IMG/VR virus record: IMGVR_UViG_3300046616_000314
Coordinates: 124,001-188,000 of that record
Length of the DNA stretch: 64,000 nucleotides
Strand: one strand, 5' to 3'
The translations under genes were made by a program, and so were the position numbers. Shown here in pieces: positions 1 to 62,905 of this stretch. The notes beneath the pieces were generated by a model, which was not told where the DNA came from, ran no database searches, and was given only the letters and a program-made list of their open reading frames with translations. Within the stretch, counting starts at the first letter, position 1. Every line of letters begins with the position of its first letter.

Positions 1-247
1 TGGCATGAGTAAAATTGCCACCAAGGGCATACATGATGGCGTATGCGATATCGGATGTAATATAGACGCGCCCGGCAACAGGAGCAAGCATACCCTTGCC
101 TTGGGTCTCGCGACCTTTCAGACCTTCGGTAGCAACGACATTGGCTGCACGAGTCGATGACGTGCCGTGATAGTACGTTTTTGCACGAACGTTATCGTCC
201 GGTGCAGCCTCGTCAATTTCGGTACCAAATAATTCGTGAAAACGCAT
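1..247 (-). CDS. ADP-ribosyltransferase-like protein (runs off window), candidate capsid-packaged protein
   Basis: Manual translation MRFHELFGTEIDEAAPDDNVRAKTYYHGTS...GLKG...GRVYITSDIAYAIMYA; YHGT and VYxT..A..YA are ART-fold motifs; TATAAATA at 252-259 just upstream. Confidence 0.65.
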   Translation of the reverse strand, partial: MRFHELFGTEIDEAAPDDNVRAKTYYHGTSSTRAANVVATEGLKGRETQGKGMLAPVAGRVYITSDIAYAIMYALGGNFTHA

Positions 248-250
248 CCA

Positions 251-496
251 TTATTTATAGTGGAGTGCGAACGCCTCGTTAGCTAATCGTTTGGCTTCGA
301 CCATAGCATCTTCTTTGAGCAAGAACGTTTCGCCTACTGCATGTCTAGTCTCAGGCGAATGGATAACGTACGTGCGATTGCTCAGTTCAAGGACATCGAA
401 ACGAATACGAACATCGTCGTATTGTTCATCATTCTCGCGGTCGATTTCATCGGGGAAGACGTGCCAGTGATCGGCAATGGTATTGGGCGGAATCAT
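251..496 (-). CDS. hypothetical protein
   Basis: ORF MIPPNTIADHW...; ATGA overlap with upstream ORF. Confidence 0.5.
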   Translation of the reverse strand: MIPPNTIADHWHVFPDEIDRENDEQYDDVRIRFDVLELSNRTYVIHSPETRHAVGETFLLKEDAMVEAKRLANEAFALHYK

Positions 497-672
497 TCTG
501 GTGGAATCTCCTTGCATAACTCACTCAATTCATCAACGCTTTGAGATAAAACGTTAAACAGTTGATCTAAGCCCTTTTGATTTACATTATTCTTGAGAGC
601 TTCATTATATGCTTTTTGTGCAGCATCAACGGCGGCACTAGCATCAGATAATTTCAAAATAAAATTTGACAT
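493..672 (-). CDS. small helical hypothetical protein (59 aa, not in ORF track)
   Basis: Manual translation MSNFILKLSDASAAVDAAQKAYNEALK...EIPPE; fills the gap and overlaps the next start. Confidence 0.45.
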   Translation of the reverse strand: MSNFILKLSDASAAVDAAQKAYNEALKNNVNQKGLDQLFNVLSQSVDELSELCKEIPPE

Positions 673-846
673 ATATTAATCATATCGAAAAATTACCAAA
701 AATTCAATTTATTTCGCAACCTTTCATCCCGATCACGCACCAAAATTGTATGGACGCGGGGGATTCAGCCCGAATTGTCCATCATAATAGGTGAGCCTGT
801 CACAAACACCCTGGCTCGTCTCCTAATAGATGAAAGGAACCCAAAC

Positions 847-1059
847 ATGCAAATCCTAGAGCTTGATCCCGTGTGGACCCTGAACCTCAACACCAATGAC
901 CTTCGGCTCGTTTTAAAGGCTCTAGGAGGGCGTTTACGAGAGGATGACACCAAGGATGCATTCGACCTTGGAGAACGGCTCACAGAGGCTCGTATCAGCG
1001 TCACACGGTCGCGGCTGAAGGCTATCGACAAGCTAGAGGAAAACTTTCGTAAGCCTTGA
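847..1059 (+). CDS. hypothetical protein
   Basis: MQILELDPVW...; GAAAGGA RBS upstream. Confidence 0.6.
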   Translation: MQILELDPVWTLNLNTNDLRLVLKALGGRLREDDTKDAFDLGERLTEARISVTRSRLKAIDKLEENFRKP

Positions 1060-1083
1060 CAATTTACGGAATTTTGGTAGTCT
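1056..1083 (+). promoter_or_regulatory. sigma70-like promoter driving the 26-gene paralog array
   Basis: TTGACA-N16-TAGTCT with extended TG; ATG 6 nt after the -10 box. Confidence 0.6.
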
Positions 1084-1089
1084 GTTCGA

Positions 1090-1416
1090 ATGAACAAGGT
1101 GGAACTTCATCTTCTCGAAAAAAGCCGCTATGTGGCGCGACCAGGGAAACTCCTAAAGGACTTCCCTGATTGTGCCATTGTGGTGTTGGAGTATCGCATA
1201 TCGTTCTATCAAAATTTCGATATCGAGTCTGTTCACAACGAGATTACTAATCTGGTGATTGGTAAACTTGAAGGTAAATGGTCTCGGCGTAATCCTCATG
1301 GTTGGCAAGAACAACGTGAAATGGGTTACAATATCAGACAAACGTTCCTTTTCGAACGCGAAGAGGACGCGATGATGTTCAAAATTCTAACGAGTGTGCT
1401 CCCCTATGTTCAATAA
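1090..1416 (+). CDS. FxxEEDA-FKLKW family small protein
   Basis: C-terminal FLFEREEDAMMFKIL. Confidence 0.75.
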   Translation: MNKVELHLLEKSRYVARPGKLLKDFPDCAIVVLEYRISFYQNFDIESVHNEITNLVIGKLEGKWSRRNPHGWQEQREMGYNIRQTFLFEREEDAMMFKILTSVLPYVQ

Positions 1417-1867
1417 GCTGGTTGACATCGCGAAAGACGCTTGGAAAACGTTTCGGGAAGACGAGACGATTGCTCGTGTCAACGTGCGTGTGCCTGAGAA
1501 AATGGTCAGCACGGATCAAGATGTTCTCCAACTTCTGGCGCAACTTCGCACCACATGGCGTGCAAATATGGCGACTGGGGCTATTTCTCCTAACACACCG
1601 ATGCCAGTTCCACCGATTCCCGGTATCCACCGGAAGTCTTTCAACATCCAAGCGGGAAGCCAGCAGTCCAATCGCTATGGGCGCCCTGGCAATGCCTATG
1701 ATTGGGCTGAACCAGAAATTCTCGAATGGTTGCAAAAGACCTATCGCTATCCTGTCGTGTTGACCCGCTATTTCGACTACGGGACTCAGCAGCAAGAATA
1801 TCGCGTGACGTTCAAAACGGACGAACATGCGTCGCTGTTCATCCTGCGCTGGGTTGGCAATAAATGA
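1394..1867 (+). CDS. FxxEEDA-FKLKW family protein
   Basis: VTFKTDEHASLFILRW; true start may be slightly downstream. Confidence 0.7.
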   Translation: MCSPMFNKLVDIAKDAWKTFREDETIARVNVRVPEKMVSTDQDVLQLLAQLRTTWRANMATGAISPNTPMPVPPIPGIHRKSFNIQAGSQQSNRYGRPGNAYDWAEPEILEWLQKTYRYPVVLTRYFDYGTQQQEYRVTFKTDEHASLFILRWVGNK

Positions 1868-2109
1868 GCCATGAAATGCTCATAAAACACGCTCTGTTCG
1901 GTAAGGTGTGGTACCCGGTGATCTCTATGGAAGAGGACGTGGGCATACAACCGTCTATCAGCTTTCAAAATTGGGCGAAAAAACATATCGCGGGTTTCGA
2001 ATTGAAAATGATTAAGTGGACCGGTCCCGAACTGTCTTGGATCACTATCAAATTTGAAAACGAAGAAGATGCTTGCCTCTTCAAATTGAAATGGTGCAAC
2101 AATGCATGA
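1864..2109 (+). CDS. FxxEEDA-FKLKW family small protein
   Basis: IKFENEEDACLFKLKW. Confidence 0.75.
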   Translation: MSHEMLIKHALFGKVWYPVISMEEDVGIQPSISFQNWAKKHIAGFELKMIKWTGPELSWITIKFENEEDACLFKLKWCNNA

Positions 2110-12573: not shown

Positions 12574-12759
12574 ATGCCTAGACTGACCAGTGCCGAGTAT
12601 CTTCGCGCCTACAAAGAAGGTCAGCAAGCTTTCGCCAACATGCTTCAGTGCAGCGATAACCCATACACCGCTCTCATGGATGACCAATTTTTCGGCTGGG
12701 AAAATGGTTGGGTTGACGATCAGCAAGCCGCCTGGGATAAACTGATAGAATCGTTTTAG
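12574..12759 (+). CDS. ribosome modulation factor (Rmf)-like small protein
   Basis: RAYKEGQQA...NPY...WENGW matches the Rmf-fold pattern; GGAG RBS. Confidence 0.5.
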   Translation: MPRLTSAEYLRAYKEGQQAFANMLQCSDNPYTALMDDQFFGWENGWVDDQQAAWDKLIESF

Positions 12760-13349
12760 TACAGACGAGATTTCTTTTTCGTATCTTTGTCTAAACGAAG
12801 TTTGGCGATCACTGCATCTTGTATTTGCTTGGCAGGCTTCCCGTCCACATAGAGTAATGGATGGTCAAAGATCGGAGAATATTGGTGTGGTCCATCAAAT
12901 TCTTCAGGATGATCAATATGATAGATGACGTGTTTCATCATTCTCTCATATTGGGTCATAACCATTTCTAAGCGAATGATATATCGACTCACGTTGTTGA
13001 TGGGTCCGATTACAAACTCTTCCGCTTCGGTATATTCGCCCTCGCGCGTGTATGGCGTAGGCTCGTAAAAACTCTTCTTCTCATCGGTGTCCCAGTAATC
13101 GACGGGCGAGATTTTGTAGTTGTGTGACAGGCGCCGTTGGTCCAGCACGAACACTACGGCTCCGAAACCATGGGCGATACGCGGGCTCCGCGACAGGCTT
13201 ACGCCATTAATGTCGTCCAAGTCCATGTTGGAATGGCTGGTTCGATCCGCCATTTTATTCTGTTTGAGAATGAGCAAAGCACCACCGAACGTCGTCCCAT
13301 GATACAGGGGCGCGTCTCGTCCTTCACATAGAATCTCATGAATAAACAT
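12756..13349 (-). CDS. ADP-ribosyltransferase-like protein, candidate capsid-packaged protein
   Basis: LYHGT...GVSLSRS...EAEEFV motif series; N-terminal MFIHEILCE leader; directly downstream of the neck gene. Confidence 0.55.
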   Translation of the reverse strand: MFIHEILCEGRDAPLYHGTTFGGALLILKQNKMADRTSHSNMDLDDINGVSLSRSPRIAHGFGAVVFVLDQRRLSHNYKISPVDYWDTDEKKSFYEPTPYTREGEYTEAEEFVIGPINNVSRYIIRLEMVMTQYERMMKHVIYHIDHPEEFDGPHQYSPIFDHPLLYVDGKPAKQIQDAVIAKLRLDKDTKKKSRLY

Positions 13350-14117
13350 TTAGCCGATTACGAAGCCATAGCCCATGTCGGAATCGATCAACTGAATGAT
13401 CTCTTGTTCCAGACGTTCCAGTTCGGATTGTGCTTCCGATTTTAGAGCGTCAGCGTTCATGGTGATACCACCTTGAGGACCGGCGAGGCTTTGGAACTTG
13501 CCACGGGCTTCAGCGATCATCAGCTTGCATTGCGCCAAGGCATAGTCACGAATCCACGGGCGAGCATATACGTCGTTGATGATGACTTCTTCAGGACGGG
13601 CGTTGTAGACGTGGACCATGATTTGCTCAACGTATGTAATCTTGCGTTGGATCGTCAGGCTCTTGGAATAGGTATCCCAAGTGTAAAGGATGTCGCGACC
13701 GAACATGCGACCAACAAGCTCTTGATATTGCATAGCAAAGTCGTAAGTGGCTAGCATACCTGCACCGCCGGTATCCATGCCACCTGGGTTGGAAATCATG
13801 TAGATGTTGTTGGTGAAAGCAAGGCTGAAGGGATCGATGGACGCGCCGCCAGCGGTGCCGCCGATGTTACGACGATACAGGGCGACGATGTTTTGAATTT
13901 CCTTCGGGAGAGTGTACTTGTTAACATCTGGTTGAGCATCGAAGAAGACGAAGCTCTCTTCAACGCTGTTACCCGAACGCTGACGATAGCGATCTAGGGC
14001 AAAGGTGATGGCAAGATTATACTCTTTATCTTCCAATTCAAGGTCAATCATGCCGCCGCCCAAACGGGTTTGAATTTCGTCAATCAATTGCGAGCGCGCA
14101 GTTACGTTATTAGCCAT
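13350..14117 (-). CDS. neck protein, T4 gp13-like
   Basis: LGGGMIDLEL, WIRDYALAQCK...KF...GGITMNAD, C-terminal FVIG pattern of gp13-like proteins; GATAAATA upstream. Confidence 0.8.
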   Translation of the reverse strand: MANNVTARSQLIDEIQTRLGGGMIDLELEDKEYNLAITFALDRYRQRSGNSVEESFVFFDAQPDVNKYTLPKEIQNIVALYRRNIGGTAGGASIDPFSLAFTNNIYMISNPGGMDTGGAGMLATYDFAMQYQELVGRMFGRDILYTWDTYSKSLTIQRKITYVEQIMVHVYNARPEEVIINDVYARPWIRDYALAQCKLMIAEARGKFQSLAGPQGGITMNADALKSEAQSELERLEQEIIQLIDSDMGYGFVIG

Positions 14118-27519: not shown

Positions 27520-27840
27520 ATGTCCGATTCGCCTGCTTATCGCCTGGGATTCTTTGGGCTCTGCGTCGAAGACAACCACAACAAGGTGTGGGGTTGGATT
27601 GTATCAACGAGCGGAAATCGTTATTACATTTTTTGGGGCAAGGCTGGCGCCAAGAAACTAAGTATGGCGGAACGCAACGTTGGGCAAATTAATAACCTAG
27701 TGCGCGAGAAACAATCGCTAGGTCGTAAGAACGGAACCTACGTCGCGGTTCATAAAGACCATGTTGAGCAAGCCTATCCCAATTTCTGGGAACAGCTTGA
27801 AGAACAATTCTGCTTCATGAGGCTGAAGGCTAAGATTTAG
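27520..27840 (+). CDS. WGR-domain-like protein
   Basis: HNKVWG...YYIFWGK...K..Y pattern; AGGAG RBS. Confidence 0.55.
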   Translation: MSDSPAYRLGFFGLCVEDNHNKVWGWIVSTSGNRYYIFWGKAGAKKLSMAERNVGQINNLVREKQSLGRKNGTYVAVHKDHVEQAYPNFWEQLEEQFCFMRLKAKI

Positions 27841-30217
27841 TCCGCGAGAGATTGGTCTTCAGAGCCGTAGGCAAACGCAGTTCCAATTCAGCGATAACAT
27901 CCTTGAGAGCTTGGCGTTGCGTATTGGATAGGTTCGGAGCAATGTTCAAGATTTTTTGACGAGCCGCCGAACTATCTAGATAGCTAGATTCGGTTGTCAT
28001 CATTTCCTTGAATTCATTACCTTCCATTACGCCATAGTACCAAACGGTCGATGACCATGCTGGCTTGATAGCAGCATGGAAGACCTGTAGCCCGGCATAA
28101 TGACCCATGGGCGTAGCGACTTCACTGATAGTTTTTCCGGTCTTGTGCGTGCTCTCGTTTCGGATAAGCCCAAATACCTCAAGGTCACTCGTTTGGAGAT
28201 TGCTCCCTAGTTTCAATTTGTGTTGCTTTACGAATTTAAGCAAATCAAAATTGCCTGCTTCTAACGCATCTTCAAGACGACGTTCAGCGGCGTCATGATA
28301 TGATGATGACTTGAAACGATTCTTTTGAGTTTTGAATCGTTGATAACGACTTACTGTACCGCTGACCGAAGTGATTTCATCTTTGTCATTCACAATGACA
28401 AGCCACGCCAGATCACTCCAACGCTCGATTTTACCAACGCGGTCTGGGGCTTCGCCATTTAGTGCGAGCGTTATATAATACGACTTTGGAGCATCCTCGC
28501 CAGGGCTAGGAATTTTCCAAATTGGATCGTTGCCAAGTTTGCCGAGGCTTTCGCTAAACTCTTGGAAGGGCTTCCACTCGCCATTGACGAAAGTGACACC
28601 TAGTGTTTCTGGCATATGAACAGCCCAACTTTCACAGAAGAAATGTTGATCATTAAAATAATCAGCGATTTCTTTTGCATATTTTGTGAACAATGCGGGG
28701 TCGCCGTTTGGCTTTTTCATTGCCGAAATCTTATTGTTATTGACTTCGGTCAGAGGCATAGTCTCGCCATCGATGGTGATAGAAACGGCATCACCTTCGC
28801 GCTGAATGGAAATATCTCCATACTGTTTAGCAAACGACTCACCCTTGGATGCAACAGAGATACCTAGATAATTAGCGATCTCTTCCATGTTCATGCGACC
28901 ATTGCCGCGAACGCGCTTGTCGGTTGATGCCTTCTTGAAAATGTTTTGAACTTGATCGACTTGGACCGGGCGAGCGCGTTGCTTCGACCAGAATTCATCC
29001 ATGAAAGCAAACACTTTATCCATGTAGCTTTTCTTGGTGTTGAAGCTGAACGTTTTCTCGTTGGCGGCTTCCAACGACTTGACCAACAGTTGCGCGGTTT
29101 TCTGAGACATTTCCTCAGTGAACGGTAGCTTGAAGCGATCAGCGATAGCTTTGATACGCTCAATTTTTTGAGCCAGCTTCGGACCATATTCTTTTTCGTA
29201 GCTGTATTCGTCGCCACGATGCGGCTCCACATTTTTGAAACGCTCTGCCATATCGGCGGCGATTTCAGTGAATGAAGCCGTATTGTCGTACTGAACTTTG
29301 ATCGGCTTGAAGCCTGGACCTTGAAGCGTGACCGCCATCTTTGAAGCCGTGGATTCAGTATTTTCGCGATGCTTGCGCATGAACGAGTAATCCTTGTCTA
29401 GGATAACGACGATCTTGCGCTTAGCAGCGGTGTAATAAGTTGTCTCGTGTTCGCCACCAACCGCATTCGAAGACACGAGGCGGTCGCCAATAGCTTTGGC
29501 GATCATGGCGGGGAGGCGTTGTAGTTGTTCGGTGTGATCAGCCGAGCCGATCTCAGCTTGCGTTGCCGCGCGATTTCGTAGTTCAAATACGTCGATCACC
29601 TTGAAAGCAGAACGCTTCATGAAGACAATTTGTTCGGGTTCGGCGCGATAGATAATAGCTTCATGTTCTGATCGCGATTTGTCCTCTAGCGCATCGATTC
29701 CTGCTTTCAGGAAGAACGCCGTTTGGGTCGCGTTGTCGTGTTTAACCTTTTGACCGACCTGGGTATAGGACTGCACAACGGCAAAGAACGCTTTTGCGAT
29801 GATATTGCCTTGTTGGAACTGACCCACACGTTGGATCATGTTCATTTTTTTCTCAGGATCGGCAATGCCCATCTTGGTCAGAATCGAGATAGCGGTGTCT
29901 TTGGTCAGGTCGTTGAGAACGAGCTTATGAGCCGACGTGTCTTGGATGACGCGCAGATAGCGGGTCTGTTGTCCGTACTGAATGTCGGCGGGGTGATTAA
30001 GAACGTATTCCAGCGGATAGGCGTACAAGCCCGCCGGGTCCGAGTGATTGGGAACCGGAGAGAAATTACGATCCAGAGTGTTACCGGCGTGATCGCCAAA
30101 ATTCACATATAAATCTTGGCGATGAGCCAAGGGCATATACTTCTTGCGGAAAGCTTCGAACGTCTTCGGAAAGAAGTCCGCAGCGTGAATTTCATTGAGG
30201 ATTTCGTATGCGCGCAT
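27830..30217 (-). CDS. large late protein with PxGLYAYPL domain, candidate capsid-packaged protein
   Basis: 795 aa; MRAYEILNE leader; N-domain paralogous to 60714-62093; AATAAATA 4 nt upstream. Confidence 0.7.
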   Translation of the reverse strand: MRAYEILNEIHAADFFPKTFEAFRKKYMPLAHRQDLYVNFGDHAGNTLDRNFSPVPNHSDPAGLYAYPLEYVLNHPADIQYGQQTRYLRVIQDTSAHKLVLNDLTKDTAISILTKMGIADPEKKMNMIQRVGQFQQGNIIAKAFFAVVQSYTQVGQKVKHDNATQTAFFLKAGIDALEDKSRSEHEAIIYRAEPEQIVFMKRSAFKVIDVFELRNRAATQAEIGSADHTEQLQRLPAMIAKAIGDRLVSSNAVGGEHETTYYTAAKRKIVVILDKDYSFMRKHRENTESTASKMAVTLQGPGFKPIKVQYDNTASFTEIAADMAERFKNVEPHRGDEYSYEKEYGPKLAQKIERIKAIADRFKLPFTEEMSQKTAQLLVKSLEAANEKTFSFNTKKSYMDKVFAFMDEFWSKQRARPVQVDQVQNIFKKASTDKRVRGNGRMNMEEIANYLGISVASKGESFAKQYGDISIQREGDAVSITIDGETMPLTEVNNNKISAMKKPNGDPALFTKYAKEIADYFNDQHFFCESWAVHMPETLGVTFVNGEWKPFQEFSESLGKLGNDPIWKIPSPGEDAPKSYYITLALNGEAPDRVGKIERWSDLAWLVIVNDKDEITSVSGTVSRYQRFKTQKNRFKSSSYHDAAERRLEDALEAGNFDLLKFVKQHKLKLGSNLQTSDLEVFGLIRNESTHKTGKTISEVATPMGHYAGLQVFHAAIKPAWSSTVWYYGVMEGNEFKEMMTTESSYLDSSAARQKILNIAPNLSNTQRQALKDVIAELELRLPTALKTNLSRTKS

Positions 30218-30220: not shown

Positions 30221-30481
30221 TTATTTATTGCACGCCAAGAAGACCATCATGGCTTCTTCTTCGGTATCGAACTGAATCCCGATTTGACTTTCTTTGTTCC
30301 GAACGGGCATCCATTTACCGAGGGTTTCGACTATAAGACCACTTACATATGACTTTTTGGGATATCCATAATTAGTCATGGCATGTTTGTAGACTTCCCA
30401 ATACTCCTTCGGAGGAACATTGGAGAATTCAGATGTTTGGGGGAAAAATATAGCGCGCGGGTTTTGTTTGGAAATATACAT
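30221..30481 (-). CDS. FxxEEDA-FKLKW family small protein
   Basis: QFDTEEEAMMVFL. Confidence 0.65.
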   Translation of the reverse strand: MYISKQNPRAIFFPQTSEFSNVPPKEYWEVYKHAMTNYGYPKKSYVSGLIVETLGKWMPVRNKESQIGIQFDTEEEAMMVFLACNK

Positions 30482-31055: not shown

Positions 31056-31114
31056 GATCCTATTCTCTCACAGATGTTACTTATGTCAAGTAATATTAAA
31101 CAGCTAAATATCGT

Positions 31115-32191
31115 ATGCGCGCATTCGAACTGTTTGAAGAAAAGAAAACCCTCTACGTCTCTCGTAAGCTGAAGAACGGCGAGGCGTTAGTGAAATGGGC
31201 TAAGGATCAAGGCTTTACTGAATGCCTAGCCCCATCGGAAATGCATGTCACGATTGCATATTCCAAGAGCAAGATCGAATGGAGCGATATGACTTCAGCC
31301 GAGAAAGAGCTTACGGTCAAAAAGAAATCTGGCAAGCGTAAGATCAAATGTTTCGGGGAAGACAAAAACGCAGTCGTTTTGGTTTTCGATAGCGAGGAAC
31401 TTAAGGATCGCTGGAAAGAATTTAAAGATGAGCTAGGGGCATCCTGGGACTTCCCGACTTATCATGCTCACGTAACCATTACCTACAACGGTCTTCCCGA
31501 AGGTGTGAAGCTCAAAGACATTACGCCCTATGAGGGTCCTTTGGAATTTGGTCCCGAACGCAAGTCGGAGATCACCAAGGATTGGAAGGGTAAGACCAAG
31601 ACGAAGAAACTCACGGAATCATTTCGTCTGGCTGACGTAGATACCGAAGAACTGTACCAGACCTTCAAGAAATCCTATGAAGCCGAAACGGGCGCAAGCT
31701 GGTCTAAGGACAAGATGCTAGAGCGGGCGCGCAATTGGGAATTCTTCGGAGAACCTACAGGCTTCGTTGCGATTCGTCGGCAAGCCTCTGGGATGGTGAA
31801 ACTCGTTGCTACGGCAGGCGACTTCAAAGGCATCATGCGCGGCTTCTCAGAACTTCAGAACGAGGGTGGTCCGTTGTGGGGCGCCGTCTCTAATCAACTA
31901 GCGAGAATCGCCAAGAGCCGGGGTATGATCGTGCCTCACCTGATGCCGGGTGGTCCGACCTTCATTAAGCTGATGGTTCCCATGATCCCGGCAGCGGTGT
32001 TCGGTGGGTTCGAACCAAAGATCAATGACGATGGTGGCATGACATTTGAGTATGATGATGTAGGGGCAGCTACCAAGTATTTGATTGGTAACAAAGAATA
32101 TTTCAAAATGGCTATTGCCAATAACAATCTTTCATCGTATATTTCAAAGGTTCCTGGGTTGAAACAATTCCTAGCTTTGATTGGATTATGA
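31115..32191 (+). CDS. Acb1-like 2H phosphoesterase (anti-CBASS-like) fused to a second domain
   Basis: Two HxT motifs (MHVTIAYS, HAHVTITY) plus GASWDF and PYEGPLEFGPE; MRAFELFEE leader; GCTAAATA upstream. Confidence 0.75.
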   Translation: MRAFELFEEKKTLYVSRKLKNGEALVKWAKDQGFTECLAPSEMHVTIAYSKSKIEWSDMTSAEKELTVKKKSGKRKIKCFGEDKNAVVLVFDSEELKDRWKEFKDELGASWDFPTYHAHVTITYNGLPEGVKLKDITPYEGPLEFGPERKSEITKDWKGKTKTKKLTESFRLADVDTEELYQTFKKSYEAETGASWSKDKMLERARNWEFFGEPTGFVAIRRQASGMVKLVATAGDFKGIMRGFSELQNEGGPLWGAVSNQLARIAKSRGMIVPHLMPGGPTFIKLMVPMIPAAVFGGFEPKINDDGGMTFEYDDVGAATKYLIGNKEYFKMAIANNNLSSYISKVPGLKQFLALIGL

Positions 32192-44997: not shown

Positions 44998-45432
44998 ATG
45001 AGTTGGGATGCCAGATGGCTCTCACAAGCGGAACACTCTGCAAGTTGGAGCAAAGATCGAAGCCGACACGTCGGCGCGGTCATCGTGAGAGGCGATATTG
45101 ATATTTCGAAAGGCTGGAATGGTTTTCCACGCAAGATTAACGACGAAGTTGACGAAAGACACGAACGTCCGCTGAAATATCTTTGGACGGAACACGCCGA
45201 AAGAAACGCAATCTATAACGCTGCAAAGCATGGTTTCGCGACTGACGGTTGTAGAATTTATCAGACTTTATATCCCTGCGCACATTGCGCCCGAGCCATT
45301 ATTCAATCGGGCATAATCGAAGTCATCACAACCGAACCGGATTGGAATGACCCGACCTATGCCGAAGAATTTAAAGTAACTAAACAGATGCTCGCGGAAG
45401 CATCAGTAAGTGTAAGGTTTTTAGATTTATGA
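44998..45432 (+). CDS. dCMP deaminase
   Basis: SKD...VGAVIV, G.NG.P, HAERNAI, PCAHC zinc motifs. Confidence 0.9.
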   Translation: MSWDARWLSQAEHSASWSKDRSRHVGAVIVRGDIDISKGWNGFPRKINDEVDERHERPLKYLWTEHAERNAIYNAAKHGFATDGCRIYQTLYPCAHCARAIIQSGIIEVITTEPDWNDPTYAEEFKVTKQMLAEASVSVRFLDL

Positions 45433-47507
45433 GCAAGCTTTTCGTTGAAAAAGTAATGTTGAACCTTCTCACCACTTGGAGAGAAACGTTCTACTACGAA
45501 AATCTGGTGCGTCGGGCTATGCACCACGGCGCGGGTCTCTTTGACCTGGGTGGTGTGTCATCGGATTGGCGTGAATTCCTGACCAACAAGCGCAACGCTC
45601 ACGTCGCGATCTTGGAAGCGCGAGGCGATAGCCGCGCGTCGAGCTACGACTATCTGGTTCCGATCACTGAATACCTCGACAAGTCGGACATGCAAACCGT
45701 GTACGACATGATCACGGGTAGCAAGCCGGAACTGAAGGAAGACTTCGTTCTGGACGCCAATATTGAACTGTTGGGCGGTCTGCTTGAACTGACTCCGATG
45801 GAACGTCTGGTTCTGCAAATGTCGGCGGAAATGCAGGAATTGGAATATCCAATGTCCGATATGTTCCAACGTCTGAATCACGATGACAAGATGCTGGACC
45901 CGGCTCTTGCCTATTCGGTCCTCTTTGGTAAGGCGGAATCGGAATTCAAGAACATCAGCAAGAGCTTCCTGCTGAACAGCGGCATTCTTCAGACGAACAT
46001 CGACTACAAGTATCTTCATCAAATCAATGAAGAACTGGTAGATTCGTTCACGGATAAGAAACTGACTCTGGATACTCTGGACGCAGTTTTGTTCCCGAGC
46101 GACATGAGCGCGAATCTGGACCTGACTTGCTACTCGCACCTGTCCAAGGAAATCGAGCGCACCGAACGTGTCATCCAAGTTTCGTTGGACGAAAAGAAAA
46201 TCGGTACCAATGTCATGTTCTGGGGTATCCCCGGTACTGGCAAGACCCAACTGGCTCTGACCCTGGCGAAGACCCACGGCTGGGACTTGAAGGTCATCGG
46301 TGACATTTCGAAGAATGATGCGACCGAAAAGAGCCGTGCGCAACGCATCGCTAGCTTGAAGATCGCGATGAAGCTGTATGCGGGCAAACCCAATACGGTT
46401 CTGTTGTTCGATGAAATGGAAGACCTGTTCAAGCACGACACGAACGCCGTGTTCTCGAAAGCCTTCATCAACCGCATCGTGGAATCCACTCCGGTTCCGA
46501 TCATCTGGACGACCAACGATCTGATCTCGCTGGGTAGCGCGGTGCTTCGCCGTATGACCTACAACATCGCGTTTGAAATCCCCACGCTTTCGGCTCGCCG
46601 CAAGATTTGGGAAAAGCATAGCGCGGACTACAAGGTTGATATCGACGCCGATACGATTTCGTCTCTGGCGACGAACTACAACATCGTTCCGGCTCTGATC
46701 GAAAACGCGGTCAAAATTTCTTCGTCGGCTGGTCTGGCTCACGCCGAATTGCCTGATATCGTCACGTCGCTGGATCGACTGATGAATTATGGTGAGAAGC
46801 GTAAGTTCCATATCACCACTAAGAAAGACACTCCGTATAGCCCGAAATGGGCTAACACTGATCTCGATTTGGACGATCTGACTTCACGTCTGACCAAAGC
46901 CAAACCGAATTTCAGCCTGTGTCTCTATGGTGCGCCCGGTACGGGTAAGAGCGAATATGGTCGTTATCTGACGGATAAGATCGGTAAGCCGCTGCTGTAC
47001 AAGCGTGCCTCTGATCTGATCAGCATGTGGGTTGGTGAAACTGAGAAGAACATCGCGCGTTGTTTCGAGGAAGCCAAAGAAGAACAAATGGTTCTGCTGA
47101 TTGACGAAGGTGATACTTTCCTGCGCTCTCGCGAAAACGCGAAAAATAGCTGGGAAGTCACTCAAGTCAATGAAATGCTGTCGCAAATGGAATCCCATTC
47201 GCAACCGTTCATTCTGACCACGAACTTGATGAAGGAACTGGACCCGGCGGCTATGCGTCGCTTCACCTTCAAGATGAAGTTCAACTTCCTGCGTTCTGAC
47301 CAAGCTGTCGAACTGTTCCAAGCGTATTTCGGAGTGGAAGCCCCCAAGGCAATCCTCACGAATGAAATCTTGGCTCCGGGTGACTTCGCCAACATCAAGC
47401 GTAAGACGGATATCCTGGGCATCACCGATGCCGAAGAAATCTACAAGATGATTCTTGAAGAATGCGCTCTGAAGCCGGATTCCCCGCCGCGCAAGCTGGG
47501 CTTCTAA
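45429..47507 (+). CDS. AAA+ ATPase with two ATPase domains
   Basis: GIPGTGKT/LLFDEME and GAPGTGKS/LLIDEGD; LDPAAMRRF; C-terminal LGF. Confidence 0.9.
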   Translation: MSKLFVEKVMLNLLTTWRETFYYENLVRRAMHHGAGLFDLGGVSSDWREFLTNKRNAHVAILEARGDSRASSYDYLVPITEYLDKSDMQTVYDMITGSKPELKEDFVLDANIELLGGLLELTPMERLVLQMSAEMQELEYPMSDMFQRLNHDDKMLDPALAYSVLFGKAESEFKNISKSFLLNSGILQTNIDYKYLHQINEELVDSFTDKKLTLDTLDAVLFPSDMSANLDLTCYSHLSKEIERTERVIQVSLDEKKIGTNVMFWGIPGTGKTQLALTLAKTHGWDLKVIGDISKNDATEKSRAQRIASLKIAMKLYAGKPNTVLLFDEMEDLFKHDTNAVFSKAFINRIVESTPVPIIWTTNDLISLGSAVLRRMTYNIAFEIPTLSARRKIWEKHSADYKVDIDADTISSLATNYNIVPALIENAVKISSSAGLAHAELPDIVTSLDRLMNYGEKRKFHITTKKDTPYSPKWANTDLDLDDLTSRLTKAKPNFSLCLYGAPGTGKSEYGRYLTDKIGKPLLYKRASDLISMWVGETEKNIARCFEEAKEEQMVLLIDEGDTFLRSRENAKNSWEVTQVNEMLSQMESHSQPFILTTNLMKELDPAAMRRFTFKMKFNFLRSDQAVELFQAYFGVEAPKAILTNEILAPGDFANIKRKTDILGITDAEEIYKMILEECALKPDSPPRKLGF

Positions 47508-57458: not shown

Positions 57459-57513
57459 AGAATAGTCCTTATAATATCAGGGATATGCTTTCTGTCAACT
57501 CATAAATAAAGAT

Positions 57514-58569
57514 ATGTCTGACTTAGCCAAACGTATCATTGAATTATCCGGTCGCATCGTAGAAGATTCTGCTTTGTTTACTTCCGATCAAGCACAAGAT
57601 GTTCTTCGTTCCCACGGGTTCGACCCTGTAGGCTTGACCGATGATATTTTCAAGATGACCTATGATCGTGGTGTGAAGGCAGGCAAGATTACACCGCGAA
57701 ACAAAGACATTATCATTCGCGCGTATGGCGTTGTGAAACATAGCGAATCTGCTGTTCCCGAGTGGGCAAAAGCGGGTGGCTATTCCGGTAATCACGAAAT
57801 CAAAACGACCGACTATTCGGATGCTAATTTCATTAAGAAACGCATCTGGGAACTGTCGGGTCACGCTAAGACTCCTTACACACTTTGGGTTTTCGACGGC
57901 AAGTCTTTCTCTACACATTTGACGGTGTTTGGAACGCCTAAGTATCTACGTGAAATGACCAAGGCAATGATGATCTATGCTCGCAAATCTGCGGCGATTT
58001 TTGTCACCGGTCCTAGCAAGGCTTTGATTTTGCTGGCTATTGGTGGATTCATTTTGGAACAACCGATGGCTCTAGAAAATCGTTCAATCACCGATCCTCA
58101 TTTTGTTGCCGCATTACCAAACATGCTGTCGCGCATTGCTCAACAAATCAAAGACAAGGCGCCACCTGTTGCTGAATTCAAGGCATGGTTCAACACTAAG
58201 AACGGTAAGATGATCGAAATGAAACCTACTGAAAGTTTCTACGATCCTATTCGTCAAGACCCAAAACAGTATGGAGTCATTGATGAAGAAATGGCATCCT
58301 TGACCAATGTTCGGGCGAAGATGGAAGCCAAAGGTTGGGCTGCTATTGGGGTCAACGCAGCGGACAAAAATAACATAACTGCTATTGTTCAGGCGGGTGA
58401 TAACGATAAAGCACTCGCGGCAAGCCGTTGGTTGTATCATCAACGTTACGAAAAGGCTCCCTGGAAAAAATTGAATGTTAAGGCGCAAGGGCGCACCATC
58501 GTTCTAGACGGGCACGCCGAGATTCTTGACTACCTTAAAACTGGTAAGGCAAGCTATTACATCGGTTGA
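57514..58569 (+). CDS. late hypothetical protein, candidate capsid-packaged protein
   Basis: CATAAATA 5 nt before ATG; RIIELSG.IVE leader. Confidence 0.65.
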   Translation: MSDLAKRIIELSGRIVEDSALFTSDQAQDVLRSHGFDPVGLTDDIFKMTYDRGVKAGKITPRNKDIIIRAYGVVKHSESAVPEWAKAGGYSGNHEIKTTDYSDANFIKKRIWELSGHAKTPYTLWVFDGKSFSTHLTVFGTPKYLREMTKAMMIYARKSAAIFVTGPSKALILLAIGGFILEQPMALENRSITDPHFVAALPNMLSRIAQQIKDKAPPVAEFKAWFNTKNGKMIEMKPTESFYDPIRQDPKQYGVIDEEMASLTNVRAKMEAKGWAAIGVNAADKNNITAIVQAGDNDKALAASRWLYHQRYEKAPWKKLNVKAQGRTIVLDGHAEILDYLKTGKASYYIG

Positions 58570-60338: not shown

Positions 60339-60672
60339 GATTTTTGTGCAACACAACGTCGGCGGTGAGAGCTTCGACTTCTGAAAAATAGATGTCAATC
60401 TTATGTGAGCGTGCGGGACCATCGGAAAATTCGATGTCTCGTGCGCTCATTCCGTTTTCACGATGCCGTAGAAAAATTCGGTAGCCAGATGGGTTATCGC
60501 ACTTTACGATAACAACAATCTTAATCTTGTCACCGATCTTCTCAATCGTTTGCGGAGTAAGACCACAATATATTGGAGCCGGAATTTGTGTATTGATTTT
60601 TTCGACAACAACTGGAACTGGCTTGAGAAACAAACCCATAAGCAACGCTAACAAATACATAAAATACACCAC
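60328..60672 (-). CDS. hypothetical exported/membrane protein
   Basis: N-terminal hydrophobic segment; CTAAATA upstream. Confidence 0.5.
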   Translation of the reverse strand: MVYFMYLLALLMGLFLKPVPVVVEKINTQIPAPIYCGLTPQTIEKIGDKIKIVVIVKCDNPSGYRIFLRHRENGMSARDIEFSDGPARSHKIDIYFSEVEALTADVVLHKNPKL

Positions 60673-60713
60673 GCGGACACCTATAGATATTTAGTTGGCT
60701 ATAAATAATAGTT

Positions 60714-62093
60714 ATGCGTATTGCTGAACTTTTTGAAAACGTGCTTCTAGAGCAAATCGATATGCGCAAGGCATTAGAGAAATACGCCAATGATCCGTCT
60801 ATCTATGTATCATACACGAATTTACCAAAAATTGGAATCAATCCGAAGTTTGACTTCGGGACACCACTAGGCATCTATGCCTATCCGCTGCGGAATATGT
60901 GGTTCGACATCAAATCGAACGATGTCCCATTCGGCGGTAATCGCAAATATATTCAAATTCTGAAAGCCGGTCCTTCGGTTATCAAAGCCGAGACTTACAA
61001 TAACTTCGAAGCAGACTGCCGGAAACTATACGATTTGTATGGCAAGGAATTTATTTCGAAATACAAAGATGCTTCCGATCCAGAAAAAATATGGAAATTC
61101 TTTGTGGATCACGCAAGCCAAGACGCCGAACACTACCATAATGGCACGATGCCAATCGTTCATTTGTGGGGACTCACACACAAATTAGCTAATTTTCTCG
61201 CGCCAGATCAGCGCAGCGGGCTTACCGTAGTGACGAAATGGAATTCAATTTTTCGTGCTTTGGGCTATGGTGGTATTTCGGATGGCGGTATGGGTTTGAT
61301 CCACGCCAACGAGCCTGCACAAGTAATTTTCTTTTCTAAGAGCGCGTTCCAGCATATCGGAATGGTAGACAACGTTCGAAAGATCACACAAGACCTTTCC
61401 AACCACGAGATCGAAGATTTGAACGATCTCATTGAAATCATAAACGAATATTGGGTAGACCACGATAGTTCAGATCGTGATGTCGGGGCAGAAGGCAATG
61501 CTGCTAAGATGCTACACCAAGCCGTAGCAAACGAATGGCTTGATCTGTTCAAGACAGGTTCGACCGCGCATTTTAAAATCAATGATCTTCATACGTTTTG
61601 GTCCAGCGTCACGATGAGTGAATTCAAGCGATTTGCTAGAATGCTATTGAAGCAGGGCAAGCCGGGTACCGTTGCCAAACTGATTCAATTGATCAAAGAA
61701 TTCCCGCAACTCGACACGTCGATCAGCAACATCGTGGAACTTGCGGCGAAGACACCTGGGGTTCGTATGAACCGCGCAGATTTCGATGCTCTCTACGATC
61801 CTGAATTCACAGAGAAAGCGGATAAAGAGGGCGTAAGCTTGCGCTATGATCGCAACGAAATCATTCTTCGTCAGGCGGTTGCGCAGTTGGTCAGAGGCGA
61901 GCAATTCAATTTGCGTCGTGCTGCTGAAAAAATGAAAGACAAACTACCGTTGGACTACGGCAAGAAAGTCACACCCGAAGACGTGAAGAAATTCCTGGGC
62001 GCCAAATATGCCCAAAAAATTGCTATGGAGTTTGAAGATTCGAGTATCGAACAGATGATCGAACGCGAACGCCGTAGATGGGTGTTCGCTTAA
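60714..62093 (+). CDS. late protein with TPLGIYAYPL domain, candidate capsid-packaged protein
   Basis: TATAAATA at 60700-60707; MRIAELFE leader; paralog of 27830-30217. Confidence 0.7.
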   Translation: MRIAELFENVLLEQIDMRKALEKYANDPSIYVSYTNLPKIGINPKFDFGTPLGIYAYPLRNMWFDIKSNDVPFGGNRKYIQILKAGPSVIKAETYNNFEADCRKLYDLYGKEFISKYKDASDPEKIWKFFVDHASQDAEHYHNGTMPIVHLWGLTHKLANFLAPDQRSGLTVVTKWNSIFRALGYGGISDGGMGLIHANEPAQVIFFSKSAFQHIGMVDNVRKITQDLSNHEIEDLNDLIEIINEYWVDHDSSDRDVGAEGNAAKMLHQAVANEWLDLFKTGSTAHFKINDLHTFWSSVTMSEFKRFARMLLKQGKPGTVAKLIQLIKEFPQLDTSISNIVELAAKTPGVRMNRADFDALYDPEFTEKADKEGVSLRYDRNEIILRQAVAQLVRGEQFNLRRAAEKMKDKLPLDYGKKVTPEDVKKFLGAKYAQKIAMEFEDSSIEQMIERERRRWVFA

Positions 62094-62281
62094 TAACTCT
62101 TGTCGATGTACAGGATGTCTTCTGGACGCTGCTTCAGAGCGCGTAGATAGCCCGAGATTTCTCGTTCGGACATATTTTCATGGCGTTCAATGATACCATC
62201 GACATATTCGATGACCATTTCCAGCTTATCTTCATTGAGATAATAGCTGGCAACCGCTGGTGAGCGGAGCGAGAAATTCAT
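62090..62281 (-). CDS. KTSC-like small protein
   Basis: S..V.S......L...IEY.DG....H.N.....YL.A resembles a degenerate KTSC domain. Confidence 0.4.
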   Translation of the reverse strand: MNFSLRSPAVASYYLNEDKLEMVIEYVDGIIERHENMSEREISGYLRALKQRPEDILYIDKSY

Positions 62282-62314
62282 TTGTTGGGATCAATCAAAA
62301 AATAAAAAGAGCGT

Positions 62315-62389
62315 TGGCGGCGATCAGAGGACTCGAACTTCTATACACCCTTTGCGAGGGCACCCGTATCCAATTCCGGGCAGATCGCC
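62315..62389 (-). tRNA. atypical tRNA-Cys(GCA)-like gene
   Basis: GGCGATC/GATCGCC acceptor stem, TTCGAGT T-loop, TC-GCA-AA loop, encoded CCA; G73, C33 and a T-stem mismatch are non-canonical. Confidence 0.6.
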
Positions 62390-62446
62390 ATGTCAAACGC
62401 TGACCATTACTATATAGGGAATCATCAAAGCCCCGTCAAGGCTTGA

Positions 62447-62905
62447 TTACGAATTTTCGTCAAAAATTTCGGCGTTTTGGAAAATGGCTTGGAAACGGGG
62501 ATGAGCCATGAACTGTCCGACAGTGGATTTATCGGCGTAGATGAATCCCAGATCGGGGTCTTCGATGAACGCATAGTGACCCGGAGACGCATACTCGCGC
62601 GCAGCGTCTTCCTTCAGAACCTCAAGGTCCAGGGCAAACATGAAGGGAATGACGTTGGTTGAAACGTCGGTCAGTTGCCGCCAAATCTGGTGGTGGATGG
62701 CTTGTGAAGCATCCCAGAAATAGATGTCGTTTTGGAGAATGAACCCGCGAGCCAGACCATACTTTGCACGCTCTATTAGAGCTTTAGTGCCATTACGGGT
62801 CGGGTTGATCGTAACCAATACATCGCGCCCGCGAATCTCAAAACGCTCAACTTTTTCGTTGAGTAGCGATTCTTCAATTATATCGATGTACTTGCGAAGG
62901 CTCAT
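62447..62905 (-). CDS. late hypothetical protein, candidate capsid-packaged protein
   Basis: CATAAATA upstream; MSLRKYIDIIEESLLNE leader. Confidence 0.65.
   Translation of the reverse strand: MSLRKYIDIIEESLLNEKVERFEIRGRDVLVTINPTRNGTKALIERAKYGLARGFILQNDIYFWDASQAIHHQIWRQLTDVSTNVIPFMFALDLEVLKEDAAREYASPGHYAFIEDPDLGFIYADKSTVGQFMAHPRFQAIFQNAEIFDENS

What the first reader, a model, noticed from the sequence alone, without database searches (positions are those of the whole stretch)
1..62905. Dispersed late genes share an N-terminal M-R-x-x-E-(L/I)-x-E leader: candidate capsid-loading tag for injected enzymes
Seen: MRFHELFGTEIDE (247,-), MFIHEILCE (13349,-), MRAYEILNE (30217,-), MRAFELFEE (31115,+), MRIAELFENVLLE (60714,+), plus looser MSLRKYIDIIEESLLNE (62905,-) and MSDLAKRIIELSGRIVE (57514,+). 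Six have a TAAATA box 4-6 nt before ATG; the seventh directly follows the neck gene. Their bodies mostly differ: two YHGT ART-like domains, an Acb1-like 2H phosphoesterase and two GxYAYPL-domain proteins. Known: T4 late promoters are TATAAATA; T4 internal proteins carry an N-terminal capsid-targeting peptide removed by the prohead protease at (I/L)-x-E, and T4 Alt is a packaged ART. Inference: a portable leader that loads diverse anti-defence or host-takeover enzymes into the head for co-injection with DNA.
Basis: partly seen in the sequence, partly recalled or inferred. Interest (0 to 1): 0.75.

Follow-up and report, generated by a model that had tools for sequence, protein, structure and literature searches.

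The report
T4-style capsid-loading tag in a megaphage
A 561-kb uncultured phage with a T4-type head puts the same 9-13-residue N-terminal tag, very like the tag T4 uses to load proteins into its head, on at least 30 otherwise unrelated enzymes, so it probably injects a large kit of host-modifying enzymes with its DNA; no virion data exist to prove it.

Summary
All seven N-termini and six TAAATA boxes sit where stated. The window is part of a 561,116-bp IMG/VR phage that has a T4-type capsid protein, a T4-type prohead protease (Peptidase_S77) and a gp55-like late sigma factor.

Genome-wide, at least 33 proteins in at least 15 sequence clusters start with M-R-x-h-x-x-h-h-E, ending in (L/I)-x-E. 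"MR plus (L/I)xE at residues 5-11" occurs in 17 of 49 genes with TAAATA 3-7 nt before the ATG, against 4 of 826 others (p=1e-19). A related 499-kb phage repeats this (28/88 vs 12/667).

The leader matches T4's capsid targeting sequence (MKTYQEFIAE) and the Alt propeptide (MELITELFDE). Across 180 homologs of the GxYAYP family, E is 95% conserved and L/I/V two residues before it 93%, although leader length varies. The Acb1 protein carries the leader as an add-on; its collinear ortholog in the 499-kb phage lacks both leader and box.

Best reading (about 0.65): a portable T4-type capsid-targeting propeptide that is cut by the prohead protease and loads ADP-ribosyltransferase-like, Acb1, NUDIX and other enzymes for injection. 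Packaging, cleavage and ejection are untested. This is a new variant of a known kind.

The parts
2..247 (-). First 82 codons of a 245-aa ADP-ribosyltransferase-like protein (the gene ends at genome 123510). The leader MRFHELFGTEIDE is at 209-247.
   Evidence: About 50 metagenomic homologs, most with leaders ending (L/I/F)xE before (M/A)AxP. Model pLDDT 92, with the first 10 residues at pLDDT 52 outside the fold; PDB hits are all ART folds but weak. H27 and E117 are invariant.
252..257 (-). TAAATA box, 4 nt before the ATG at 247
12756..13349 (-). 197-aa YHGT ART-like paralog. The leader MFIHEILCE is at 13323-13349. It has no box and starts directly after the stop of the adaptor gene.
   Evidence: Ortholog in the 499-kb phage: MRWSEIIEEGVRDAHLYHG behind a TAAATA box.
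13350..14117 (-). Head-tail adaptor (neck) gene upstream of the seventh leader gene (context)
   Evidence: phrog_211, E=6e-35
27830..30217 (-). 795-aa GxYAYP-family protein. The leader MRAYEILNE is at 30191-30217.
30222..30227 (-). TAAATA box, 4 nt before the ATG at 30217
31105..31110 (+). TAAATA box, 4 nt before the ATG at 31115
31115..32191 (+). 358-aa protein: leader MRAFELFE (31115-31138), Acb1 2H-phosphoesterase domain (residues 11-159), then a C-terminal module of unknown function.
   Evidence: Pfam PF23474, E=1e-37. PDB sequence hits: Pam3 portal protein residues 470-620 (E=7e-20) and T4 Acb1 7t26 (E=2e-7). HVT motifs at 44-46 and 108-110. The collinear G002 ortholog lacks both leader and box.
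57503..57508 (+). TAAATA box, 5 nt before the ATG at 57514
57514..58569 (+). 351-aa protein with a looser leader MSDLAKRIIELSGRIVE (IIE at 8-10, IVE at 15-17). Possible member.
   Evidence: No Pfam or PHROG match.
60702..60707 (+). TAAATA box, 6 nt before the ATG at 60714
60714..62093 (+). 459-aa GxYAYP-family protein. The leader MRIAELFENVLLE is at 60714-60752. The N-terminal domain (about residues 28-225) has an ART-like fold.
   Evidence: Model pLDDT 81; the leader forms a helix at residues 3-11 ahead of the first strand. Structural matches: cyanophage A4 pre-ejectosome 9k3a_B Z=7.1, MbcT Z=5.2, ART-PolyVal-like and DUF3990 clusters.
62447..62905 (-). 152-aa protein with leader MSLRKYIDIIEESLLNE (62855-62905). 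It resembles MRKYMDIINEA of another leader gene, with two extra residues in front.
   Evidence: Its body shares a repeated module with the 967-aa leader protein at genome 282793. The G002 homolog starts MRNWINLVE.
62912..62917 (-). TAAATA box, 6 nt before the ATG at 62905

Best explanation
The leader is a T4-type capsid targeting sequence: a short N-terminal propeptide. It has a basic residue at position 2, hydrophobic or aromatic residues at about positions 4 and 7-8, and it ends in (L/I)-x-E.

Inferred mechanism, by analogy with T4:
1. Late in infection the tagged proteins are made from TAAATA-type late promoters.
2. The tag docks them onto the scaffolding core of the growing prohead.
3. The gp21-like Peptidase_S77 protease cuts after the Glu.
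4. The freed mature enzymes stay in the head with the DNA and enter the next host cell with it.

The cargo is a large, mosaic set of enzymes: several ADP-ribosyltransferase-like families (including the very widespread GxYAYP domain), an Acb1 cyclic-nucleotide phosphodiesterase and a NUDIX fusion. In the sister phage it also includes GNAT and phospholipase-A2-like proteins.

Shown here: the motif, its statistics, its link to the box, its portability, its likeness to the T4 tags, and the presence of the T4-type protease, capsid protein and sigma factor. Inferred: binding to the core, cleavage, packaging and ejection.
For: 1. T4-type machinery is present in the same genome: Peptidase_S77 (E=5.5e-27), Gp23 (E=8e-78), and a gp55 homolog (E=4.5e-7). 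The head-module proteins themselves start with (L/I)xE-bearing N-termini (MKIFEFVDE, MRAMLEKALVALLNE, MDKTLAELL). The capsid protein has LME four residues before the region that aligns with mature T4 gp23.

2. T4 sequences read from NC_000866: IPII and IPIII MKTYQEFIAE, Alt MELITELFDE. This phage has MRAYEILNE, MRAFELFEE and MLITELFEA. Some homologs read MKTFLQFIQEAR or MITFKEFLAEMA. Published work places T4 targeting at residues 4 and 7 and processing at residues 8 and 10 (PMC9026906). Alt is cut at ITE-6 (PMC5694885).

3. In 180 GxYAYP homologs anchored on RRNP, position -2 is E in 95% and position -4 is L/I/V in 93%, while leader length ranges mostly from 9 to 19 residues. The unrelated YYHGT family shows the same (L/I/F)xE before (M/A)AxP.

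4. Link to the box: 17/49 vs 4/826, p=1e-19. G002 repeats it: 28/88 vs 12/667, p=2e-19.

5. The signal acts at the protein level. Synonymous codons vary within the leader. The leader also occurs on Shine-Dalgarno-led genes. Box-led tail sheath and other virion structural genes lack it.

6. Portability: at least 15 BLAST clusters carry it. Modules lie directly behind a leader in one protein and are internal in another. Leader flavours swap between orthologs. The Acb1 ortholog pair exists with and without leader plus box.

7. Cargo types match those proposed for virion-delivered 'polyvalent' proteins: ART-PolyVal (E=3e-19), and DUF3990, GNAT and PLA2-like. The Acb1-like domain also occurs on the C-terminus of the Pam3 portal protein. 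The GxYAYP domain resembles part of a solved capsid-internal pre-ejectosome protein.
Against: There is no proteomic, structural or transcript evidence for this phage, and no RNA run holds it.

A set of 33-50 different tagged proteins per genome, many only 70-200 aa long, is far beyond anything known for T4-type heads.

Two S77-positive phages with GxYAYP homologs (G003, G008) show no expansion. Two complete phages without a detectable S77 (G004, G015) still have h-x-E before ARRNP. The link to this particular protease is therefore not established by co-occurrence.

The conserved E-A-R-R-N-P stretch could be a structural part of the domain rather than a cleavage site.

A few leaders (for example MRFHELFGTE and MRELMDILGD) lack a clean (L/I)xE at the usual place.

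Fold matches to the pre-ejectosome protein and to ARTs are weak (Z 5-7; E 0.002-0.1).
Confidence: 0.65

Rival explanations
1. The leader is a short N-terminal docking helix for some other late process, not for the prohead core. Examples: assembly into a cytoplasmic complex, a chaperone or protease recognition tag, a degron, or timing control. The proteins would then act in the producing cell.
For: The set is unusually large and includes many small proteins. Late expression alone could suit Acb1 if host CBASS fires late; that point is my own reasoning. The G002 Acb1 ortholog works without the leader. Phages without a detectable S77 keep h-x-E in the GxYAYP family.
Against: This does not explain the close match to the T4 capsid targeting sequence and Alt propeptide at exactly the residues that matter in T4 (PMC9026906). 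It also does not explain near-invariance of (L/I/V)-x-E, the similar N-termini on the head-module proteins themselves, or the polyvalent-type cargo.
Confidence: 0.17
2. The shared N-terminus is a by-product of a nucleic-acid signal. The first codons would be constrained because the mRNAs are leaderless (or start within the box-ATG unit) and need a particular 5' sequence for transcription start or ribosome loading.
For: TAAATA sits a fixed 4-5 nt from the ATG and there is no Shine-Dalgarno sequence. Codon 2 is CGC or CGT in 23 of 23 leaders that have Arg at position 2. MR is also mildly enriched in box genes that lack the full leader.
Against: Codons 3-9 vary synonymously (TTA/CTG/CTA/CTT, ATT/ATC, GAA/GAG, TTT/TTC) while the residues are kept. 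CGC and CGT are simply the two commonest Arg codons genome-wide. The leader also occurs on SD-led, operon-internal genes (genome 114529, 123510, 300854, 514164; a dozen in G002). 27 of 49 box-led genes, including tail sheath and structural proteins, have no leader.
Confidence: 0.08
3. The leader is only inherited sequence: a conserved N-terminal stretch of a few large paralog families, spread by duplication and by recombination at the promoter-leader cassette, with no function of its own.
For: Nine of the roughly 33 proteins belong to the GxYAYP cluster, and another nine form a loosely linked ART-like mosaic cluster. Within the GxYAYP family the leader runs straight into the conserved RRNPxxNPK stretch.
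Against: The leader is found on at least 15 clusters with no detectable body similarity, including Acb1, whose Pfam model and T4 homolog begin only after it. It is kept under amino-acid-level selection across a 47% GC and a 57% GC genome and in thousands of distant homologs. Leader length and flavour change while (L/I)xE stays.
Confidence: 0.07

Closest known systems
T4 internal proteins IPI, IPII and IPIII and their capsid targeting sequence (CTS)
   Same: A 10-residue N-terminal tag: M, basic residue, aromatic or hydrophobic residue at 4, hydrophobic at 7-8, ending (L/I)-x-E, followed by A (MKTYQEFIAE|A against MRAYEILNE, and MKTFLQFIQE|AR in homologs). The bodies are unrelated and the tag is shared. 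The genes are late, and a gp21-type protease is encoded in the same genome (PMC9026906, PMC3012670).
   Different: T4 has three such proteins (a handful per T-even phage), and they are small basic proteins. Here there are 33-50 per genome, many of them enzymes of up to 967 aa. Arg rather than Lys is at position 2, and most leaders are one residue shorter. The genes are dispersed and each has its own box 4-5 nt from the ATG. Packaging is proven for T4 and not here.
T4 Alt (packaged, injected ADP-ribosyltransferase)
   Same: An ART-type enzyme with a short N-terminal propeptide. MELITELFDE is almost identical to MLITELFEA of genome gene 300854 and close to MRAFELFEE. Alt is cut at ITE-6 and ejected with the DNA (PMC5694885).
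   Different: No sequence similarity of the bodies to Alt was found. The ART-like domains here belong to ART-PolyVal/DUF3990-like and H-Y-E-type families. C-terminal processing as in Alt was not examined.
Ejection-protein propeptides of phiKZ-like giant phages (SPN3US, 201phi2-1)
   Same: Giant phages whose heads hold about 50 proteins, several of which carry propeptides removed by a T4-related prohead protease after a Glu (PMC5694885, PMC7411985).
   Different: Those propeptides are mostly longer than 100 residues, the cleavage motif is (S/A/G)-x-E, and there is no shared short leader. This phage has a T4-type Gp23 capsid protein and short T4-like leaders.
Polyvalent proteins of phages and conjugative elements (ART-PolyVal and associated domains)
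   Same: The same domain vocabulary (ART-PolyVal, DUF3990-like) and the same mosaic shuffling of modules. From my own knowledge, not read here: these proteins have been proposed to enter the host cell with the DNA.
   Different: Classic polyvalent proteins are single giant polypeptides. Here most modules are separate genes, each with its own leader and box. Only a few (for example the 967-aa protein at genome 282793) are multi-module.
Acb1 (anti-CBASS 2H phosphoesterase, T4 gene 57B)
   Same: Pfam Acb1 well above the cut-off, both HxT motifs present, and sequence similarity to solved Acb1 7t26.
   Different: It carries an N-terminal leader of 8-10 residues, a late-type box, and an extra C-terminal module of about 200 residues. 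No Acb1 is known to me to be packaged. An Acb1-like domain on the Pam3 portal protein is the nearest virion-linked case.

Membership tests
T4-type capsid targeting sequence / gp21-processed head-internal proteins | N-terminal propeptide of about 10-20 residues ending in the gp21 cleavage motif (L/I)-x-E | tested here: met
   (L/I)xE ends at residue 8-13 in 5 of the 7 window proteins and at 10-17 in the 2 looser ones. In 180 family homologs E is 95% and L/I/V 93% conserved at the site.
T4-type capsid targeting sequence / gp21-processed head-internal proteins | Hydrophobic or aromatic residues at about positions 4 and 7, which are the targeting determinants in IPIII | tested here: met
   Position-wise enrichment in box genes: L/F at position 4, I/F/L at position 7, against background. 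T4 has Y4 and F7 (PMC9026906).
T4-type capsid targeting sequence / gp21-processed head-internal proteins | The genome encodes a gp21-family prohead protease, a scaffold core and a Gp23-type shell | tested here: met
   PF03420 at 92.8 bits and PF07068 at 260 bits. Head module in T4 gene order.
T4-type capsid targeting sequence / gp21-processed head-internal proteins | Late expression together with the head proteins | tested here: inconclusive
   TAAATA box 4-6 nt upstream in 6 of 7 genes. The box also precedes tail sheath and virion structural genes. A gp55 homolog is present. No transcript data exist.
T4-type capsid targeting sequence / gp21-processed head-internal proteins | Physical incorporation into proheads and removal of the tag | not testable with these tools
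   The phage is uncultured and no virion proteome exists. The protease-peptide complex prediction gave no answer.
T4-type capsid targeting sequence / gp21-processed head-internal proteins | Ejection into the host with the DNA | not testable with these tools
   Inference from T4 only.
Acb1 (PF23474) | Match to the family model above the curated cut-off | tested here: met
   129 bits against a cut-off of 27; residues 11-159 cover model positions 1-143 of 144.
Acb1 (PF23474) | Two H-x-T/S catalytic motifs of the 2H fold | tested here: met
   HVT at 44-46 and HVT at 108-110.
Acb1 (PF23474) | Hydrolysis of CBASS cyclic nucleotides | not testable with these tools
   An enzyme assay is needed.
ADP-ribosyltransferase superfamily (the YHGT proteins at 2-247 and 12756-13349) | ART fold with an H-Y-E or R-S-E catalytic set | tested here: inconclusive
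   No Pfam match. For the 2-247 protein, modelled at pLDDT 92, the best PDB matches are all ARTs (pertussis S1, Arr, Tpt1, PARP1, DarT) but only at E=0.02-0.8 and TM below 0.5. H27 and E117 are invariant in 43 homologs. 12756-13349 was not modelled; it is 20% identical to the modelled protein in that alignment.
ADP-ribosyltransferase superfamily (GxYAYP domain) | ART fold | tested here: inconclusive
   AFDB clusters named ART-PolyVal-like or DUF3990 at probability 0.87-0.99 but E=0.01-0.3. MbcT Z=5.2; A4 pre-ejectosome protein Z=7.1. No Pfam match.

The most novel reading that the evidence does not exclude
A clade of roughly 0.5-Mb soil and freshwater megaphages with T4-type heads carries an 'injectome' of 30-50 different enzymes per genome. 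Each is marked by a 9-13-residue T4-like capsid-targeting tag and by a late promoter fused 4-5 nt to the start codon. The tag would then be a sequence-only way to list virion-delivered effectors. That list would include a pre-loaded anti-CBASS Acb1 and the hitherto unnamed GxYAYP ART-like family (more than 3,500 representative sequences), most of whose members carry it.
Probability: 0.45. Interest if true: 0.8.

Novelty: new variant of a known kind. Interest (0 to 1): 0.62.

Why it matters
If the tag works as in T4, a simple motif search would tell which proteins of uncultured giant phages are delivered into the host at the moment of infection. Such proteins can act before any phage gene is expressed, and they are prime candidates for anti-defence and host-takeover functions. 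It would assign a location, and a first idea of role, to dozens of 'hypothetical' genes per genome and to a very large uncharacterised protein family. It would also give the first case of an anti-CBASS enzyme shipped in the capsid. In addition, it would show that the T4 loading mechanism, already used as a protein-delivery tool, has been scaled up more than ten-fold in nature.

Tried and rejected
- A complex prediction of the S77 protease with residues 1-30 of the Acb1 protein gave no answer (score 0.00). It counts neither way.
- Megablast of 6.5 kb of the window, and tblastn of two family members, against 50,697 phage records found no cultured relative. The only hits were a 735-kb uncultured phage, whose homolog has the domain internally and no leader, and a Tunturiibacter jumbo phage ART-annotated protein. 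No virion proteome could therefore be borrowed.
- A search for RNA runs to map transcript starts found none that holds the phage.
- Co-occurrence of the family with S77 on 22 long IMG/VR contigs was inconclusive: 7 of 22 overall and 3 of 5 near-complete ones. Four AT-rich genomes, with or without S77, show no leader expansion.
- Pfam and PHROGs find nothing for most leader proteins.
- A sequence search of the ART-like protein against the PDB gave only noise.
- The chance explanation is rejected on the statistics.
- Caveat: gene calls are my own crude hexamer-based caller, whose start choice favours box-adjacent ATGs. A caller-free count gives the same spike.

Full report
**What the window is.** The 64-kb window is bases 124001-188000 of a 561,116-bp IMG/VR virus record (97% complete by CheckV, 47% GC) assembled from a rhizosphere metagenome. 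The genome encodes a T4-type major capsid protein (Pfam Gp23, E=8e-78) and a T4-type prohead protease (Peptidase_S77, E=5.5e-27). These lie in a head module with T4 gene order: portal, two small core proteins, protease, scaffold, capsid protein. A homolog of T4's late sigma factor gp55 is also present (E=4.5e-7). No cultured phage is close.

**The observation.** The seventh gene starts directly after the stop of a head-tail adaptor gene. The bodies are as guessed:
- 31115-32191 is an Acb1 2H phosphoesterase. It scores 129 bits against a cut-off of 27, the domain begins at residue 11, and both HVT motifs are present.
- 27830-30217 and 60714-62093 belong to one 'GxYAYP' family.
- 2-247 and 12756-13349 are YHGT proteins. 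The AlphaFold model of the 2-247 protein (pLDDT 92) matches only ADP-ribosyltransferase folds in the PDB, and weakly.

**The set is larger than reported.** I called 955 genes with a crude caller of my own.
- 16 proteins match M-[RKFLY]-x-x-E-[LI]-[FILV]. A second flavour (MRDLMNIVE, MRDLLNLLED, MREFMKIVES, MRYRDLLKES) brings the total to at least 33.
- With the first 14 residues removed, these proteins fall into at least 15 BLAST clusters. One is a GxYAYP cluster of nine. Another is a loosely linked mosaic cluster of nine in which modules recur at different positions.
- 'MR + (L/I)xE at residues 5-11' occurs at 21 N-termini, against 2.5 expected from internal-Met contexts (p=4e-13).
- The same pattern is found in 17 of 49 genes that have TAAATA 3-7 nt before the ATG, against 4 of 826 others (Fisher p=1e-19).
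- A count that uses no gene calls shows that 52 of the 188 TAAATA hexamers in the genome lie 4-5 nt before an ATG, and 49 of those open at least 60 codons.

**The signal is in the protein, not the RNA.** Within the leader, Leu, Ile, Phe and Glu codons vary synonymously while the residues are kept. Arg2 uses the two commonest Arg codons. The leader also occurs on genes with a Shine-Dalgarno sequence and no box, at genome 114529, 123510, 300854 and 514164. Conversely, 27 of 49 box-led genes lack it, among them the tail sheath, virion structural proteins, PhoH and a methyltransferase.

**Comparison with T4.** I read the T4 sequences from NC_000866:
- IPII and IPIII begin MKTYQEFIAE|A.
- Alt begins MELITELFDE.
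- gp24 begins MAKINELLRE, gp22 MLKEQLIAE, and gp21 MNEPQLLIE.

The window's MRAYEILNE aligns with the T4 targeting sequence with one gap: M, basic, small, Y, E, hydrophobic, hydrophobic, x, E. Genome gene 300854 begins MLITELFEA, nearly the Alt propeptide. Published work shows three things. The first 10 residues of IPIII suffice for packaging. Residues 4 and 7 matter for targeting, and residues 8 and 10 for cleavage (PMC9026906). Alt is cut at ITE-6 (PMC5694885). This phage's own head-module proteins start in the same way (MKIFEFVDE, MRAMLEKALVALLNE, MDKTLAELL), and its capsid protein has LME four residues before the part that aligns with mature gp23.

**The leader is conserved far beyond this genome.** A profile of the eight GxYAYP paralogs finds 3,529 representative proteins at E<=0.001, all from uncultured material. 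Most begin with a leader, and some are almost the T4 sequence (MKTFLQFIQEARKNP, MKSFKQYLEEARRNP). In the 180 homologs that have the RRNP anchor, the residue two before the anchor is Glu in 95% and the residue four before it is L/I/V in 93%. The distance from Met1 varies, mostly between 9 and 19 residues. This is the pattern expected of a conserved processing site behind a variable tag. The unrelated YYHGT family shows the same thing: MRWEEISEMAAP, MITFKEFLAEMAAP, and even two leaders in tandem.

**Portability.**
- The Acb1 Pfam model, solved T4 Acb1 and an Acb1-like domain at the C-terminus of the cyanophage Pam3 portal protein all align only from about residue 10 of the window protein.
- G002 is a related 499,572-bp phage (57% GC; capsid protein 68% and protease 58% identical). 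It has a collinear ortholog of the Acb1 protein, 38% identical over 355 residues. That ortholog starts at the equivalent of residue 9, has a Shine-Dalgarno-like sequence, and has neither leader nor TAAATA box.
- Between orthologs the two leader flavours swap (MRYSEIINE against MLLRDLFEA).
- The same module lies directly behind a leader in one protein and at residues 149-288 of another.

**Replication and limits of the range.** In G002, TAAATA ends 4 nt (69 genes) or 5 nt (19 genes) before the ATG. The leader is found in 28 of these 88 genes against 12 of 667 others (p=2e-19). G002 is a relative, so this is conservation across deep divergence rather than an independent origin. Four AT-rich phages that carry GxYAYP homologs show neither the TAAATA spike nor the expansion; two of them have S77 and two have none detectable. 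The expansion is therefore a trait of this clade. Homologs of the ART-like protein also lie on contigs of 562 and 578 kb.

**Cargo.**
- Pfam names Acb1, ART-PolyVal (genome 106644, E=3e-19; 547053 weakly) and NUDIX (514164) in this genome.
- In G002 it names two GNAT proteins, a phospholipase-A2-like protein, ART-PolyVal, DUF3990 and PFIN. 35 of the 42 scanned proteins have no Pfam match, and none is a replication or housekeeping enzyme.
- The GxYAYP domain model (pLDDT 81) has the leader as a separate short helix.
- That domain's nearest structural matches are a capsid-internal pre-ejectosome protein of cyanophage A4 (Z=7.1), the ART-fold toxin MbcT (Z=5.2), and AlphaFold clusters named ART-PolyVal-like or DUF3990. 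All of these matches are weak (PMC12002296).

**Mechanism and rivals.** The best-supported reading is a T4-type capsid targeting propeptide. It would dock cargo onto the scaffolding core and be cut after the Glu by the S77 protease, and the cargo would then be ejected with the DNA (confidence about 0.65). Docking, cleavage, packaging and ejection are inferred from T4, not shown. The rivals are:
- a docking helix for another late process (0.17);
- a by-product of leaderless-mRNA constraints (0.08), which is contradicted by synonymous variation and by Shine-Dalgarno-led members;
- mere inherited sequence (0.07), which is contradicted by at least 15 unrelated bodies and by the Acb1 ortholog pair.

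Points against the main reading are the unprecedented number of tagged proteins, the lack of a clean co-occurrence with S77 in other phages, and the possibility that E-A-R-R-N-P is structural.

**Novelty.** T-even phages are known to carry a few diverse internal proteins that share a capsid targeting sequence (PMC3012670, PMC9026906), so the kind is known. Four things are new here:
- the scale, 33-50 genes per genome;
- the enzymatic cargo, which includes Acb1;
- the fixed fusion of a late-type box to the start codon;
- the link to a very large unnamed protein family.

Noticed in passing
Genome-wide; in the window at 252-257, 30222-30227, 31105-31110, 57503-57508, 60702-60707 and 62912-62917, and before 14670 and 17875: The hexamer TAAATA is almost reserved for one position, 4-5 nt before an ATG with no Shine-Dalgarno sequence: 52 of 188 hexamers here and 103 of 171 in the 499-kb relative. 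This suggests leaderless late mRNAs. By the T4 rule, as I recall it (TATAAATA at -13 to -6), a 4-nt spacer would put +1 on the T of the ATG. Either the start lies 1 nt closer than in T4 or the box has another role.
   Followed up: partly
window 31115-32191; PDB 8hds_A: The Acb1 domain's best solved-structure sequence match is not Acb1 but the 'Pam3 portal protein', residues 470-620 (E=7e-20). A cyanophage portal therefore carries a C-terminal Acb1-like domain. I found no mention of this domain in the Pam3 structure paper (PMC9942802).
   Followed up: partly
window 31115-32191, residues about 190-270; L018 1057-3270: The C-terminal half of the Acb1 protein (...RNWEFFGEPTGFVAIRRQASG...) closely resembles the C-terminus of a 737-aa GxYSYP protein in the 735-kb phage LR756501, so it is another shuffled module. 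The protein atlas gives only a weak GNAT-like lead (TM about 0.4).
   Followed up: partly
window 27830-30217 and 60714-62093; genome 52785, 112841-123510, 298939, 300854: The GxYAYP domain (KIGINP..TPxGIYxYP ... GIIHxNEPxQAVFF) has 3,529 representative homologs but no Pfam or PHROG family. Its conserved stretch E-[AK]-R-R-N-P-x-x-N-P-K lies right after the leader. Five tandem paralogs lie just upstream of the window.
   Followed up: partly
Homologs of the protein at window 2-247 (P0227-P0275): In the YYHGT family the residue after the putative cleavage Glu is usually Met (E-M-A-A-P), and some database homologs start exactly at MAAP. This could be an internal start that gives an untagged isoform, or simply a miscalled start.
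   Followed up: no
genome 1-553 (- strand), L014: Another leader gene (MRFHEIITEGRDAPLFHFTS, with TAAATA 6 nt upstream) runs off the start of the contig. When the contig ends are joined the frame stays open for 25 more codons, to 209 aa in all, so the record may be circularly permuted there.
   Followed up: partly
window 41112-42299 and 45429-47507: An RNA ligase (phrog_968, E=2e-40) and a 692-aa AAA-type ATPase (phrog_10401, E=5e-79) lie between the late-gene blocks. They are not linked to the leader.
   Followed up: no
G002 (IMGVR_UViG_3300049988_000286) 301674-304150: In the 499-kb relative the untagged Acb1 ortholog sits 9 nt behind a box-led GxYFYP-family gene (MQDLMEYEF...), as if co-transcribed with a tagged neighbour.
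   Followed up: partly
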